A DNA stretch of 63,570 bases, the filler included, from Octopus bimaculoides (Eukaryota): the NCBI RefSeq assembly GCF_001194135.2. It is 6 parts of 6 records of this genome, joined end to end, with 100 filler letters (N's around TTAATTAATTAA, not from the genome) between each part and the next. Parts side by side here need not be neighbours in the genome. Positions count along the whole stretch, not along the records: positions 25,405 to 44,189 come from NC_068989.1; positions 44,290 to 49,484 come from NC_068982.1; 4 more parts are not named here. One strand, 5' to 3'. Both the position numbers and the translations under genes were made by a program. The notes below the pieces were generated by a model, which did not search any database, was not told where the DNA came from, and was given only the letters and a program-made list of their open reading frames with translations. Positions 38,489 through 44,533 of this stretch are shown here, piece after piece (the stretch's first letter is position 1; every line of letters begins with the position of its first letter).

Positions 38489-39004
38489 AATGACAGACGA
38501 TGGAGAAAGATCACGAAAGCATGAGTAATAATGTTTGAGAAATCAATGCAGAGGTCTCATGTATGGTTTTAGCTTTTTTTTTTTTTTGCAACTTGGCTCT
38601 CCACTGTGAGTTACTAAGTTCTATGATACTTCTTTTATTGGGAAGTTCACTTGTTGCCTTAAGAATTTGGAATCGCCCACATAATACCATCAAGGTGTAG
38701 TCGTAAGTTTTGCGTTTGGAGATGAATAAAAAAAATGATGTAACAGTCAAAATATTTAAGCAAGCAAAATTTCACAAGACTAAAGGAACTTTAAGGCCAT
38801 TAAACTTAAATGCCCCCCACGAATGCAGGGATAAAAGAGATGAATGCTGAAATCTGTCCAGTAAAACTCTGAACAGAGACTATGTGTGACAAACAACGGC
38901 TGCTATTGTACAACTTTTCATCATATTGAAGGCCAACTTCGTATATTCTCGTAATAGGAGAAGAACTAAAGATGGGCTGACGCTACTACAATGTTGCTTT
39001 TTTT

Positions 39005-39199
39005 TTTACCTTTTAATATTTCAGTCATAGGACTGCGGCCATGCTGGAGCCCTTCAAAGAGTTTGGTCGAGTAAATCGGTCACTGTACCTATTGCAAGTC
39101 TGGTACTTATTCTATAGGCCTCTTTTGCCGGACAGTTCAGTTACGGGGATGTTAACAAACCAGCATCGGCTGTCAGGCGATGGTGCTGGACAAACGCAT

Positions 39200-39231
<32 letters not shown>

Positions 39232-39390
39232 CAGACTTCCACTTAGTTGCCGTTTACCAAAGTCATTCACAAGGTATTTATCGCTCCGGAACTATAGTAG
39301 AAGACACTTGTCCAAGGTACCACACATTGGGACTGAACCCAAAACTAACTGTTTGCAAAGCGAGCTTCTAAACTACGTAGACATGCTGGC
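39005..39390 (-). mobile_element. SINE-A copy
   Basis: gactgcggccatgctggagc tail, tatagtagaagacacttgtccaagg body, internal (CA)n. Confidence 0.82.
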
Positions 39391-39961
39391 GCCGCTGTAT
39401 TGTTTTATGATTAGATGGCCCGATTAGCAATATCAGCTTCGATAAAGTCACCGGTGTTTCTACAGTCAAGTGAAGCTTAACTGATTGATTGCAAAGTGCA
39501 ACATTAACGAACGCAAGAGATAAAGGATTTTCAATTAAAGCTGACAACTTGAATAGTAACAGTATCTAACGGGTTCCTGAAGATATTCGCACTCCTGTGA
39601 AAATGGTGTAGCGTACACACTAGTGAAATTCCTCTCTTCTTTATTATATATACATATATTCGAACGTAGCAGATAACAGCTCTCGAAGCCAGGAATACTA
39701 GTAAGAAACTTTGCAGAGGTACCTAACTAGTGTTTGAATTGCGAAGAGACTGACACCGATTGAGAAGGAATTACACTAATTCTTTGAGGACATATAACGC
39801 AGACCAATTTCATTCATTGAATAAGCTGACATTATAAGTAACAATAAGAAATCTGAATACCAAAGACTTTATTCAACGAATAATGAATGACACAGCTCAA
39901 AATCCTGCTGAACTACAGATCACTCGGCCGTCACGTGACAGATGTTTCAAGCAGAATCGCT

Positions 39962-40215
39962 GGCGGCGAGCTAGCAGAATCGTTAGCACATCGGGCGAAA
40001 TGCTTAGCGGCATTTCGACCATCTTTACGTTCTGTGTTCAAATTCCACTGGGGTTGACTTTGCCTTTCATCGATAAAATAGGTACCAGTCGAGCACAGGG
40101 GTCGATGTTTTGTCCTCAAATCCTACCACGGTCAACTTTTACTTTCCATCCTTCCAGTGTCGATAAAAATAAAATACATACCTATTAAGTACTCGGGTCA
40201 CTTTAATCGATTAAG
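39962..40215 (+). mobile_element. SINE-B with a tandemly duplicated central block
   Basis: ggcggcgagctagcagaatcgttagc..gttcaaattcc (tRNA-like head). The gactttgcctttcatc..gtcgataaa..gtac block occurs twice. Confidence 0.82.
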
Positions 40216-40505
40216 CTTGAGTCTACGTAAGAGATTATTGCTATAATTACTATCACTGCTTCTTTTTGCCTCAGAATGGTACACATAACTTGGTCGCGTT
40301 TTTTGCTTCGACAGCAGGCTATGAGCCAGTGGCCTTGAGTACGAAGCAGCCTCCTCTTAGACTTTTCCATTCTTTTTGGTCAATCTTGGCCATGGAGTGC
40401 TCTTAGTAATATTTTAGCTGTTCCAATAAACAATTTCTTTGCAACAGTTACATCTCACAACCAACGCCTTTTACGATATGAGCATACCTCATTTACCTAG
40501 GGGCT

Positions 40506-40545
40506 CAATTCTAGGATCTTTCTGATCAGAAAGATCCCAATTCTA
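40506..40545. repeat. 24-bp perfect palindrome flanked by an 8-bp direct repeat
   Basis: caattcta GGATCTTTCTGA TCAGAAAGATCC caattcta. Confidence 0.9.
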
Positions 40546-41128
40546 ATCCATGTGTTGCTGTCGATAAAAACTATAGGGTCCAGGGCATTGATTTACCCGG
40601 GGGCTTACAATGCTGCTAAGACTCCTATTCACAATCTCCTTCGATCTCTCTTTGCAAACTTGTCCTATCCCTAATGCTCTTACGATTACAAGTATGATAG
40701 TTACCTTCTTCACTTTCTACATTCTAATGATTTCATACTTAAACTCGTTGAAATTATTATTGTAAAATATAACAAGAATACTGAGAATTCGCGACAGTTT
40801 AATAGATACAAAAAGGTTAAGATAAAAAGTAGGTGACGCTTAAGAAGAAGAAAAAAATGGCTTGTAGCTAGACAAGGTGACAACGGTGGTAGAGGTGAGG
40901 TTCGCTCTATAGAATTTAGTTGCGAAATTAAATACATAGAAAGATTAATAGAATTAATAGGCCGTGAAGAGTAGTAGCACAAGTGACATTTCTAAACAGC
41001 TGGATATAGAGAGAACGCAGACACATCTGTGTGTTTGTTAACTTCAATGAACAAATGAAATGATGGCAGTTGAAGCTTTTGTACACCCTGCATAGTATAC
41101 ACACATAGTCATATATATGACAGGCAAA

Positions 41129-41169
<41 letters not shown>

Positions 41170-41661
41170 CTATAACATTATTGTACTACAATCTACGTAT
41201 ATAACGCTTCAAGTAGAGGTTTTTTTTTTCTTTTGGTCGGGAGGCTTCTTTTTTAATAGTGGAACGAAATATATAAACTATTCTACACAGGTTTGCAAGA
41301 CAATTGACTGATGAATAAAATGAAGTGTGGTGCGCGCACGCGTGCGTATGTGTGTGTATTGAAAATCTATAGCTCAGTCGGTCGAGCAACCGTGTACTTC
41401 ATTTACTGGGATGCATATTTCTCTGATGTGAAAATAAATATGTGATACAGTATATTAAGATTTGATAAAGCTTTGTCAATGCAATCACACTACTGCAGAA
41501 CAAAATGATACAAGACGCGAGAAATATTTAAGGACATACTTGGTAATTTGATAAAACAACTCTCATCTGGTAAAAACCAAATGTGTTTTAATAAAAAATT
41601 ATGCACATGGCAATCTCACTAGTGCTAGTACCATAGAAAAATGCACACATGCAGTAAAGTA

Positions 41662-42270
41662 TTGGGTTGTCTGGAAAGTTCGTGCCAATTTACAGTAGCT
41701 TGCCTTTCGACTTATAAGAATTCGATGAGATATGACGGCTCGGCCGTCTCTCCCCAGTTCTTATATTAATCATTAAATCCAGAAATACAACACGAGGGAT
41801 AACGGTAACAACAGATCAATAGTTTATTCTAGGTTGCTGTAGAGCCGTTTCGTTCCTGGGTGAATAGGCCTGCCGCTAGAATACCAAAGGAAGCTTCGAC
41901 CACATGTTGTGGGAGAGTTGAGAGATACGTGTTGTCACCACCGCTGCTTGAGAGAAAAGAGCTCGGACGCTATTGCTTTTTCTCCACTTGTTGCATTGCG
42001 CATGCGTGCTCGGGTACTTCCGCTGAGGGCAAATCCCTTGCAGATGCGCAATGGCACTTCCCAAGATGGCGGCCACACGCGCCACTACAGACTTATTTGC
42101 CATGAAACCACCTCAATTCTGAAAAGAGGGTATTTTCTAGTTAAAGGAAAGATAGAGACGCATTGTGCAACAAAATGGTTGATATTTGGTTGATTAAAAA
42201 TGTAATGGCCAGTATTTATTGACCTTTTTCTTTCCTTTAAAAATCGGCGCGAACTTTCCGGACAACCCAA
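41662..42270 (+). mobile_element. Non-autonomous mariner derivative with ~30-bp TIRs and TA TSD
   Basis: TA|ttgggttgtctggaaagttcgtgccaattt ... aaatcggcgcgaactttccggacaacccaa|TA (3 mismatches). The residual IVQQNG*YLVD* resembles a mariner C-terminus. Confidence 0.88.
41713..42089 (-). mobile_element. Solo-LTR-like insert (377 bp) nested in the mariner
   Basis: Flanked by the 4-bp duplication GACT (41709-41712 and 42090-42093). The minus strand begins TGTAGTGGCGC, ends CTTATA, and has AATAAA near its 3' end. It is GC- and CpG-rich. Confidence 0.75.
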
Positions 42271-43906
42271 TAGTTGTTATCATTGTGTTTTTCAGTTAGT
42301 GTTGTTTGTAAATTTTGTAATTAAATTTTGTTGTGTATCTGAAAGCTTGATGCTCAAATATTGAGCCACTGATGCTCAAATATTGTAAGTCTTGTTACTT
42401 CTTACCCTTAGACTTACATGAGGATTTAATTATATACACACACACACATTCTCTCTCCCCCCTCTCTCTCATGTGTGCGTGTGTTGGTGGTGGTAAGGCC
42501 CTCAATTCAAGGAGAATCAGAGGGACATCATGGTGACATAGTGGGGTCAGAGCCCATCCCACACCAGGTCTGAATAGAGCTAGTTTCTTCCAGAGACAAA
42601 ATGTGCACGTGTATGCATGTTTGTGTGTGTGTACGTGCATGTGTATGAGAGAGAGTGAGTGAGTGAACGAGCGAGTGAGTGAGTGAGAAGAAGAAGAAGA
42701 AGAAGAATGTCAAAGATGTTTCCATATGTACTTTTGTTTTTTCTAATAGCCATAATGCACATATAGCCACTATACGAAATGTCAAAGAGCTATATATACA
42801 TGACAAGAGAACCATGATTTGGGTGACACCTTTGCTTTACTAAGAATATCTAAGAAGATAAATATTTAATAACTTTTGTAGGGAGATAGCAAAATACTTG
42901 AAAGTGTTTACCATTCATTAGCAGAAACTGTACCATTCCATTAGGATTCCATACAGTCATACTTCGTAGTTTAGAGAACAATCTTGGATAAGTCTGTTGC
43001 TTTCTGTCTTGTTGTTGTTTAAATCTGTTTAATCGCTGATTTTCAGACTATGGGGCTGGAGGAGAATAGAACTGATGTCAATGCCTGACTAGTAGCATTT
43101 GCTTGGCGGAAAGATATCAAAAACCGAAAGTTGGCAAACAATGATCTTTTCCCATTAGCACAAAGCTTTTGGATTGATAGGAGAGTGGTGAATGAAAGTG
43201 TGTGCGTGCGCGTGTGTGTGTAATATTCATGTTTTTCTCTTGTAAGTAGAATGGCTACTAATGGGAATTGAAACCGAGCTGCAGATGAAGCAGACTTCTA
43301 TGTTAAACTATAAATAAATTATGATTACCAACTCTGATTATTCTTGTGTGCACACGCACACACCTGTTTTATCTCGTATCCTCTTCCATATAAACTGTGT
43401 CTCTTCTATTTCATATAAAATTCATGATGTAGATTTGAGTGACGCCTAAAGAAAGTGCTATTGTGAATAGTGTGTACGCTACTGTACAGTAGTATAACAT
43501 CTATCTGTATACTAGTACTTCATTGCTTTCTTCACTATGTGTGTGTTTGTGCGTGTGTGTGTTGCTATATGAATTTCCCATTGTGATTACCACTTTCATG
43601 TCTTTCAAATTCAAAAGGCAATCAATGTTATCAGCCCATCACATTCCACTGTTAGCCAGCTATGTTGAAGACTTGTCACATAGTGAAAGAGTGAATTTTA
43701 GAAATTTTTAGCTTGTTCCTGAAGAGAAGAGGAAGAAACTCTGAAGAAGAAATTCTGAGGAAGAAACTAAGTAGAAAATTGACCAATATGGGATCTTTCC
43801 TCAACACTAAGCATTGAAAAGCTTATGTCTGTGGTTCAAATTTACCCCACATTTAAATTTGAACAGCAGTTAGAGTGTCGGGCTCACAATCATGAGGTAG
43901 TGAGTT

Positions 43907-44185
43907 TATAGGAAATTGGTTATACACCATTAGGTGTACACCTGCTTTCCCATATTAAATTCTAAATAACAACGTAACGCAGAACTCCGAACTATCAACA
44001 CAACAATATTTATTTATGGTGAAAATAGGCAGCAGTTATTTGTGAAGCTCTGGTGCTGACATGTTAGAGAGCTCCGCTGTTGGACGTCTGCCATCGTCGC
44101 CGGCCGGCGAGAAAAGAGAAAGAATCAGGGCGCCAAACTTGGATATTGATGACTACGCATGCGCACGAGACAAGGCGTTACTACA
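43907..44185 (-). mobile_element. Solo-LTR-like insert (279 bp) interrupting a SINE-C-type head
   Basis: Flanked by AGTT (43903-43906 and 44186-44189). The minus strand begins TGTAGTAACGC, ends CCTATA, and contains AATAAA. The left flank ttagagtgtcgggctcacaatcatgaggtagtgagtt is a SINE head cut at the B box. Confidence 0.75.
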
Positions 44186-44533
44186 AGTTNNNNNNNNNNN
44201 NNNNNNNNNNNNNNNNNNNNNNNNNNNNNNNNNTTAATTAATTAANNNNNNNNNNNNNNNNNNNNNNNNNNNNNNNNNNNNNNNNNNNNATATATGTTTA
44301 GAAGCAAAGAAGTTTATTAAAGAATACACACACACACACGCTCACACATACATACACATGTATTACTATTGTTATTAAAAATATAATTTCATGAATTGTG
44401 TGGTATGCATTAAGGACACATTACACAATGTTAGTCTTAGATAGCCTTAGACATATGGGATGTTCAGAGTTGGAATGTCTTTGATCATAAGATCTGTCCA
44501 ATTAGTGTTGACCTGGAGCTAAACAACTCCAAC

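What the first reader, a model, noticed from the sequence alone, without database searches (positions are those of the whole stretch)
41709..44189. Pair of solo-LTR-like inserts with shared non-canonical TGT...ATA termini and exact 4-bp TSDs
Seen: two inserts of different length and mostly different sequence (41713-42089 inside a mariner; 43907-44185 inside a SINE head). Each has a perfect 4-bp flanking duplication (GACT; AGTT). On the plus strand both start TATA(A/G)GAA and end GCG..ACTACA, so on the minus strand they read TGTAGT...TATA rather than TG...CA. Both have AATAAA about 105-110 bp from the minus-strand 3' end and a GAGAAAAGAG motif. Established: LTRs normally end TG...CA, and many Gypsy elements make 4-bp TSDs. 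Inference: the same deviation in two divergent copies suggests an LTR lineage with asymmetric integrase attachment sites rather than chance mutation.
Basis: partly seen in the sequence, partly recalled or inferred. Interest (0 to 1): 0.72.

Follow-up and report, generated by a model that had tools for sequence, protein, structure and literature searches.

The report
Two solo LTRs ending in TA
Two short inserts in an animal genome are most likely leftover end-pieces (solo LTRs) of two related retrotransposon families whose ends read TG...TA, not the usual TG...CA; this is a known, uncommon variation.

Summary
Insert 1 (41713-42089, 377 bp) is flanked by GACT/GACT and insert 2 (43907-44185, 279 bp) by AGTT/AGTT. 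Both read 5'-TGTAGT...TTC(T/C)TATA-3' on the minus strand. These are the only two TATARGAA...ACTACA pairs in the 18.8-kb piece, and both carry a 4-bp duplication; 0 of 500 shuffles gave two.

The inserts are weakly but collinearly related (global alignment z = 6.1). On the minus strand both show the module order described for animal LTRs:
- a TGT start;
- a GC-rich, CpG-retaining upstream part;
- one AATAAA, 116 and 108 nt from the 3' end;
- a GT-rich stretch after it;
- an AT-rich tail.

New here: the last 53 and 48 nt fold into a hairpin (z -4.1 and -4.8) that uses the very last base. The sequence differences between the two outer stems keep the pairing. This places TATA in the element rather than in the target.

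I read them as solo LTRs of one lineage with TG...TA ends. The family-level tests could not be run: no collection held another copy, so paired copies, gag-pol, PBS and PPT are untested. TG...TA and other non-TGCA LTRs are already described, so this is a new member of a known kind. Interest is low to moderate.

The parts
41713..42089 (-). Insert 1: solo-LTR-like element, 377 bp. On the minus strand it reads 5'-TGTAGT...TTCTTATA-3'.
41709..41712 (.). Left copy of the target duplication of insert 1 (GACT). Identity with the right flank continues through 41715 (GACTTAT).
42090..42093 (.). Right copy of the target duplication of insert 1 (GACT). Identity continues through 42096.
43907..44185 (-). 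Insert 2: solo-LTR-like element, 279 bp. On the minus strand it reads 5'-TGTAGT...TTCCTATA-3'.
43903..43906 (.). Left copy of the target duplication of insert 2 (AGTT).
44186..44189 (.). Right copy of the target duplication of insert 2 (AGTT). These are the last four bases of the piece, so any longer identity cannot be seen.
42078..42089 (-). 5' terminal motif of insert 1 (TGTAGTGGCGCG). It matches insert 2 at 9 of 12 positions. This is the canonical TG end.
44174..44185 (-). 5' terminal motif of insert 2 (TGTAGTAACGCC).
41823..41828 (-). The only AATAAA of insert 1 on the minus strand. It starts 116 nt from the 3' end.
44009..44014 (-). The only AATAAA of insert 2 on the minus strand. It starts 108 nt from the 3' end.
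41778..41822 (-). GT-rich stretch after AATAAA in insert 1: 67% G+T against 50% for the whole insert. It is part of the best-conserved internal block.
43964..44008 (-). GT-rich stretch after AATAAA in insert 2: 78% G+T against 53% for the whole insert.
41713..41765 (-). Terminal hairpin of insert 1: 53 nt, -20.3 kcal/mol, z -4.1. The 8-bp outer stem pairs the final TTCTTATA with an upstream TATAAGAA.
43907..43954 (-). Terminal hairpin of insert 2: 48 nt, -22.0 kcal/mol, z -4.8. The 9-bp outer stem pairs the final TTTCCTATA with an upstream TATGGGAAA.
41999..42006 (.). Palindromic CGCATGCG in the GC-rich upstream part of insert 1. It is one of only two in the piece.
44156..44163 (.). Palindromic CGCATGCG in the GC-rich upstream part of insert 2. 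It is the other of the two in the piece.
41952..41961 (+). GAGAAAAGAG (CTCTTTTCTC on the minus strand) in insert 1. It is one of only two in the piece.
44109..44118 (+). GAGAAAAGAG in insert 2. It is the other of the two in the piece.
41662..42270 (.). Host of insert 1: a mariner-like miniature element with 35-nt terminal inverted repeats (88.6%) and TA at 41660-61 and 42271-72. It is older than insert 1.

Best explanation
Both inserts are solo LTRs. Each is the single long terminal repeat left after a retrotransposon was integrated with a 4-bp staggered cut and its internal part was then lost by recombination between its two LTRs. Integration and loss are inferred, not shown.

The sense strand is the window's minus strand. 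Reading 5' to 3', each insert has:
- a TGTAGT attachment end;
- a GC-rich, CpG-retaining, promoter-like U3 part;
- one AATAAA followed by a GT-rich stretch (polyadenylation signal and downstream element);
- an AT-rich U5 part of roughly 80-90 nt;
- a terminal hairpin whose outer stem contains the last base.

The two inserts belong to two diverged families of one lineage. In that lineage the U5 attachment end is ...TATA, giving a TG...TA end pair. I infer that the TA is a lineage trait and not damage. I also infer that the end is held in place by two constraints at once: recognition by the integrase, and pairing in a U5 hairpin of the kind that retroviruses and Tf1-type elements use next to the primer binding site.
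For: - Duplications and shared ends: read directly; 2 of 2 motif pairs carry a 4-bp duplication, against 0 of 500 shuffles.
- Homology of the two inserts: the global alignment score is 82, against 20.7 +/- 10.1 for shuffles (z 6.1) and 19 for the reverse complement. The shared 7-mers are mostly collinear. CGCATGCG and GAGAAAAGAG occur only in these two inserts.
- Module order on the minus strand: GC is 0.54 and 0.51 upstream of a single AATAAA, and G+T is 67% and 78% in the next 45 nt. The best local block is AATAAA plus the GT-rich stretch. This matches the modules conserved in animal Metaviridae and retroviral LTRs: terminal short inverted repeats, AATAAA, and a GT-rich stretch (PMC3601003).
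- Terminal hairpins of 53 and 48 nt, with z -4.1 and -4.8 and 0 of 200 shuffles as stable. In the outer stem, pair 4 is A-U in one and G-U in the other, and pair 5 is A-U against G-C. The stem ends at the base that the 4-bp duplication gives as the boundary. The G-U pair forms only in minus-strand RNA.
- No terminal inverted repeats and no internal direct repeats.
- No tRNA, ribozyme or other Rfam family in the inserts.
- CpG observed/expected is 0.98 and 1.13 in the inserts against 0.52 in the flanks (Poisson P about 0.005 each). The inserts are therefore young or unmethylated, which argues against two independent end mutations.
- Insert 1 interrupts an older mariner-like element.
Against: - No second copy of either insert, no paired copy, and no gag-pol, PBS or PPT could be examined. 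The LTR identity therefore rests on anatomy alone.
- The 3' CA that defines most LTRs is absent.
- The two ends are only 3-4 of 6 complementary.
- blastn finds no similarity between the inserts, and the best local block is reached by 7 of 300 shuffles.
- Insert 1 could formally have a duplication of up to 7 bp, and the right flank of insert 2 is cut off.
- With two sequences, the covariation evidence is one compensatory pair and one wobble pair.
Confidence: 0.7

Rival explanations
1. They are short non-autonomous retroposons (SINE-like) copied by a LINE reverse transcriptase that recognises the 3' terminal hairpin. The short duplications would come from target-primed reverse transcription.
For: - The size range (279-377 bp) fits.
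- The stable, conserved hairpin sits exactly at the 3' end of the minus strand. Stringent LINE/SINE pairs use 3' stem-loops (my own knowledge).
Against: - No tRNA, 5S or 7SL-like head was found.
- TTTT runs on the sense strand would stop RNA polymerase III.
- There is no A-rich or simple-repeat tail.
- Both copies are full length, with the same 5' end and the same 4-bp duplication length.
- An AATAAA plus GT-rich block about 110 nt from the end has no role in this model.
Confidence: 0.1
2. They are non-autonomous elements of some cut-and-paste or otherwise unclassified transposon with unlike ends. The true duplication may be 7 bp, ending in TTAT, and the element would start three bases further in.
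For: - The flank identity at insert 1 is 7 bp.
- The right flank of insert 2 is unseen beyond 4 bp.
- No coding partner is known.
Against: - There are no terminal inverted repeats.
- The known superfamilies with 4-bp duplications have terminal inverted repeats (my own knowledge).
- In both inserts the hairpin stem uses the TATA and stops at the 4-bp boundary. Under the 7-bp reading this would be a double coincidence.
- The LTR module order is unexplained.
Confidence: 0.07
3. They are ordinary TG...CA solo LTRs that each happened to mutate CA to TA after insertion.
For: C-to-T transitions are the commonest substitution. Only two copies were seen.
Against: - The same base would have had to change in two separate copies whose duplications are intact (8 of 8 bases) and whose CpG is undecayed.
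- The C is not in a CpG.
- The T pairs with an A in the hairpin outer stem of both inserts. A C there would break that pair, so the upstream arm would have had to change too.
Confidence: 0.05

Closest known systems
LTRs of animal Metaviridae (Gypsy/Ty3-type) elements and retroviruses, as modelled by Benachenhou et al. 2013 (PMC3601003)
   Same: - A TGT start at the 5' end.
- A variable, C-containing U3.
- A conserved AATAAA with a GT-rich stretch after it.
- A short U5.
- A 4-6 bp duplication.
The 5' motif TGTAG is close to that paper's gammaretroviral 5' motif, which starts TGWAG.
   Different: The 3' end is TATA, not ...ACA. The two ends are only partly complementary. The superfamily is unknown, because no internal region was seen.
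Non-TGCA LTR retrotransposons of the TG...TA type: the 'TGTA' class of LTR_retriever (10.1101/137141) and AcCOPIA1 of onion (cited in PMC5659011)
   Same: The same end dinucleotides (5' TG, 3' TA) and short LTRs of a few hundred bp.
   Different: Those are plant elements, mostly Copia, usually with 5-bp duplications. Here the host is an animal, the duplication is 4 bp and the superfamily is unknown.
Other non-canonical LTR ends: Tos17 (TG...GA), the Rosaceae TGTT and AACA families, Zam-group errantiviruses (AGT...AYT), and non-TGCA elements in the annelid Lamellibrachia (11% of intact elements)
   Same: They show that whole lineages, in plants and in animals, can carry ends other than TG...CA, sometimes on one side only.
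   Different: The end letters differ. None of these is shown to be related to the inserts here.
U5-IR stem-loop of retroviruses and the similar structure in Tf1 (Lin and Levin 1998, listed in PMC4600332 and PMC4974528; mentioned in PMC3601003)
   Same: An inverted repeat inside U5 forms a stem-loop at the U5 end, next to where the primer binding site would follow.
   Different: Here the stem includes the very last LTR base. Its role is inferred from position only, and no primer binding site is available in a solo LTR.

Membership tests
LTR of an LTR retrotransposon or endogenous retrovirus (solo LTR) | Flanking target duplication of 4-6 bp | tested here: met
   GACT/GACT and AGTT/AGTT. 2 of 2 motif pairs carry one, against 0 of 500 shuffles. 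Insert 1 could formally be read as up to 7 bp.
LTR of an LTR retrotransposon or endogenous retrovirus (solo LTR) | 5' end TG (TGT...) | tested here: met
   Both inserts start TGTAGT on the minus strand.
LTR of an LTR retrotransposon or endogenous retrovirus (solo LTR) | 3' end CA (...ACA), complementary to the 5' end | tested here: not met
   Both end TATA. No shift of the boundary by 1-3 bases gives CA. The ends are 3 of 6 (insert 1) and 4 of 6 (insert 2) complementary. This feature is not universal.
LTR of an LTR retrotransposon or endogenous retrovirus (solo LTR) | AATAAA followed by a GT-rich stretch, upstream of a short U5 | tested here: met
   One AATAAA, 116 and 108 nt from the 3' end, then 67% and 78% G+T. 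This is the best-conserved internal block.
LTR of an LTR retrotransposon or endogenous retrovirus (solo LTR) | Paired copies flanking gag-pol, with a PBS after the 5' LTR and a PPT before the 3' LTR | not testable with these tools
   There is no other copy in the piece. No collection held the source genome.
Gypsy/Metaviridae specifically | Domain order RT-RNase H-integrase in pol | not testable with these tools
   No internal region is linked to these LTRs. A 4-bp duplication is compatible but not diagnostic.
Non-TGCA 'TGTA' class of LTR retrotransposons | LTR starts TG and ends TA, bounded by a duplication | tested here: met
   The class is defined in 10.1101/137141.
SINE | Internal RNA polymerase III promoter head (tRNA, 5S or 7SL type) and an A-rich or simple-repeat tail | tested here: not met
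   No tRNA. No Rfam family in the inserts at E up to 1. TTTT runs on the sense strand, and no tail.
DNA transposons with 4-bp duplications (for example Ginger) | Terminal inverted repeats | tested here: not met
   No inverted repeat between the two ends of either insert.
Helitron | 5' TC, 3' CTRR after a subterminal hairpin, insertion between A and T without a duplication | tested here: not met
   The ends are TGTAGT and TATA, and duplications are present.
TRIM-type miniature LTR element (complete, not solo) | Two short direct terminal repeats inside the insert | tested here: not met
   No internal direct repeats of 9 nt or more.

The most novel reading that the evidence does not exclude
The two inserts mark an undescribed animal LTR-retrotransposon lineage. 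Its U5 attachment end is fixed as ...TATA and forms the foot of a conserved U5 terminal hairpin. One short sequence would then serve both end recognition at integration and an RNA structure next to the primer binding site. Its integrase would accept T in place of the otherwise near-invariant C.
Probability: 0.45. Interest if true: 0.4.

Novelty: new member of a known kind. Interest (0 to 1): 0.3.

Why it matters
Practical effect: annotation tools that demand TG...CA would miss or mis-trim these families in this genome. The two inserts give exact boundaries for two such families.

Biological interest: a one-sided departure from CA, kept in two diverged families and locked into a hairpin stem, would be a natural example of how far the end that the integrase joins can drift. 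Similar departures are already on record in plants, insects and an annelid.

Tried and rejected
- Other copies in the piece: none. blastn with word size 7 found nothing. All three TATARGAA sites lie in the two inserts.
- Other copies through proteins: translations of the inserts, first one frame and then stop-free stretches from all six frames joined with X spacers, gave no hit among 5.8 billion proteins.
- Exact look-up of ten window ORFs: none is in the collection. The source contig therefore could not be fetched, and the bases after 44189 stay unknown.
- A last protein search with a mariner remnant, an RT-like fragment and four other open stretches: no hit.
- DNA scans:
  - A degenerate pattern over the shared AATAAA block gave 16 metagenome matches, all limited to the pattern itself.
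  - The flank of insert 2, the mariner repeat and both 5' ends gave nothing in viral contigs.
  - The flank of insert 2 gave nothing in bacterial and archaeal genomes.
  - A loose end-plus-CGCATGCG pattern gave only bacterial chance matches.
- The mariner repeat as a text string in papers: none.
- Pfam on ten open stretches of the piece: nothing significant.
- Rfam on the left flank of insert 2: no tRNA-like hit.
- Rejected readings:
  - TRIM, and any transposon with terminal inverted repeats.
  - Helitron.
  - A tiny foldback element nested at the LTR end. It would have to be ancestral to both families and to end exactly at the LTR boundary.
  - The two inserts as the two LTRs of one element. 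Their sequences differ and each has its own duplication.
Full report
**Observation.** The piece reads as the finding says. Insert 1 is 41713-42089 (377 bp), between GACT at 41709-41712 and GACT at 42090-42093. Insert 2 is 43907-44185 (279 bp), between AGTT at 43903-43906 and AGTT at 44186-44189. On the plus strand they begin TATAAGAA and TATAGGAA, and they end ...CGCGCCACTACA and ...GGCGTTACTACA. On the minus strand they therefore read 5'-TGTAGT...TTC(T/C)TATA-3'. GAGAAAAGAG is present once in each insert and nowhere else in the 18.8-kb piece. The same is true of the palindrome CGCATGCG.

**Chance.** I enumerated every TATARGAA...ACTACA pair 150-1000 bp apart on both strands of the piece. There are exactly two, and both have a 4-bp flanking repeat. 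Among 500 block shuffles the mean number of such pairs with a repeat was 0.004, and none had two. The motif was chosen after the fact. The flanking repeat is independent of it, and it is present in 2 of 2 cases.

**Are the two inserts related?** blastn finds nothing between them, so 'mostly different sequence' is fair.
- A global alignment scores 82, against 20.7 +/- 10.1 for dinucleotide-preserving shuffles (z = 6.1). The reverse complement scores 19.
- Identity is 48% over 279 aligned columns, 9 of 12 at the 5' end and 10 of 14 at the 3' end.
- The shared 7-mers are more numerous than in shuffles (15 against 6.2) and mostly collinear.
- The best local block is AATAAA plus the following roughly 17 nt (19 of 22 identical, with one gap). 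On its own it is only marginal, since 7 of 300 shuffles reach it.

They are distant relatives, or they share the same ordered set of functional modules.

**Anatomy on the minus strand.** Both inserts have the following parts in order:
- a TGTAGT start;
- a GC-rich part of 261 and 171 nt (GC 0.54 and 0.51) that holds CGCATGCG and CTCTTTTCTC;
- a single AATAAA, starting 116 and 108 nt from the 3' end;
- 67% and 78% G+T in the next 45 nt;
- an AT-rich tail.

This is the set and order of modules that Benachenhou et al. found conserved in animal Metaviridae and retroviral LTRs: short inverted repeats at the ends, AATAAA, a GT-rich stretch after it, and a poorly conserved U3 (PMC3601003). It sets the sense strand as minus, U3 at the TGTAGT side and U5 at the TATA side.

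The last 53 nt of insert 1 and the last 48 nt of insert 2 (minus strand) each fold into one hairpin.
- The energies are -20.3 and -22.0 kcal/mol, with z -4.1 and -4.8, and 0 of 200 shuffles fold as well.
- The outer stem pairs the terminal TTCTTATA (or TTTCCTATA) with an upstream TATAAGAA (or TATGGGAAA).
- Counting from the terminus, pairs 1-3 and 6-8 are the same in both inserts. Pair 4 is A-U against G-U. Pair 5 is A-U against G-C. Every difference between the two inserts in this stem keeps the pairing.
- The G-U pair forms only in minus-strand RNA, which agrees with the AATAAA orientation.
- The inner stems differ in sequence but are present in both.
- The TGTAGT end has no significant fold (z -0.4 and +1.7).

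By position, this is the counterpart of the U5-IR stem-loop that retroviruses and Tf1 have next to the primer binding site. That structure is cited; the primary paper is not held. The function here is inferred.

**Boundaries.** The flank identity at insert 1 is 7 bp, not 4: GACTTAT at 41709-41715 and at 42090-42096. The right flank of insert 2 stops at the end of the piece. From sequence alone, a duplication of up to 7 bp with the element starting three bases further in cannot be excluded. Two things argue against it. First, both inserts share TATA at this end. Second, in both the hairpin stem uses all four of these bases and stops exactly at the boundary given by the 4-bp reading, because the next possible pair would be A opposite A in both. 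No shift of 1-3 bases yields a CA end.

**Age and hosts.** CpG observed/expected is 0.98 and 1.13 in the inserts, against 0.52 in the surrounding 2.5 kb. The Poisson P is about 0.005 for each. The inserts are therefore younger than their surroundings, or protected from methylation. Insert 1 sits in a 609-bp mariner-like miniature element (41662-42270) with 35-nt terminal repeats (88.6%) and TA on each side. It is therefore the later event. The claim that insert 2 sits in a SINE head could not be verified. There is no tRNA, no tRNA-like Rfam hit even when the flank is searched alone, and no second copy in the piece.

**What they are not.**
- Neither insert has terminal inverted repeats or internal direct repeats. 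This excludes cut-and-paste transposons with 4-bp duplications and complete TRIM-type elements.
- There is no tRNA, 5S, 7SL or ribozyme family in the inserts. There are TTTT runs on the sense strand and no A-rich tail. All of this speaks against SINEs.
- The ends and the duplications exclude Helitrons.

**Search for relatives.** No collection at hand held another copy.
- Translations of the inserts in all frames found nothing.
- None of ten window ORFs is in the protein collection. The source contig and the bases after 44189 could not be fetched.
- A last protein search with other open stretches of the piece found nothing.
- DNA pattern scans gave nothing or only chance matches.

**Comparison with what is known.** Ends other than TG...CA are documented.
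- LTR_retriever lists seven non-canonical types in plants, including TGTA, that is 5' TG and 3' TA (10.1101/137141).
- AcCOPIA1 of onion ends TG...TA, Tos17 ends TG...GA, and Rosaceae families end TG...TT or AA...CA (PMC5659011).
- 11% of intact elements in an annelid lack TGCA (PMC8220671).
- Zam-group insect elements have AGT...AYT.

The present pair fits this known kind. What it adds is an animal case with 4-bp duplications, in which the deviant end is also the foot of a conserved hairpin.

**Mechanism.**
- Shown: two insertions with short duplications, shared ends, a shared module order, and a shared terminal hairpin.
- Inferred: integration of a retrotransposon DNA copy by a DDE integrase that makes a 4-bp stagger; later loss of the interior by LTR-LTR recombination; transcription from the GC-rich part with polyadenylation after AATAAA; a role of the hairpin in starting reverse transcription; and an integrase that tolerates T before the terminal A.

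I put 0.70 on the solo-LTR reading. I put about 0.45 on the fuller claim that TA is a fixed trait of an undescribed lineage, tied to the hairpin.

**Verdict.** It is a new member of a known kind, with interest 0.3.

Noticed in passing
window 31694-31764 and 35354-35424: A 71-nt direct repeat, 98.6% identical, with sharp edges, 3660 bp apart. Nothing around it is similar. Its origin is unknown.
   Followed up: partly
window 36781-38483: A large palindromic arrangement around the N gap 36869-37245. The arms are 37246-37499 / 37660-37913 (254 nt, 99%) and 36781-36868 / 38396-38483 (88 nt, 100%). It could be an inverted duplication or a scaffolding artefact. It holds a mariner transposase C-terminal remnant at 37446-37685, with a mirror copy.
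   Followed up: no
window about 38185-38480, minus strand: A decayed reverse-transcriptase-like fragment with the motif order of LTR-retrotransposon RTs. It is broken by several frameshifts and stops. It has no relevant Pfam hit at E up to 1 and no protein hit. No link to the two inserts is shown.
   Followed up: partly
   Followed up: no
window 25405-44189: The piece has four N gaps (26402-26530, 28455-29298, 30440-31098, 36869-37245) and many TA, CA and GA microsatellites. These microsatellites account for all the weak microRNA-family matches in Rfam.
   Followed up: yes
window 42064-42074 and 42020-42030 (insert 1): The GC-rich part of insert 1 also carries AAGATGGCGGC and a CGGAAGT motif, beside the palindromic CGCATGCG. 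From my own knowledge these resemble binding sites common in CpG-rich housekeeping promoters. This was not tested.
   Followed up: no
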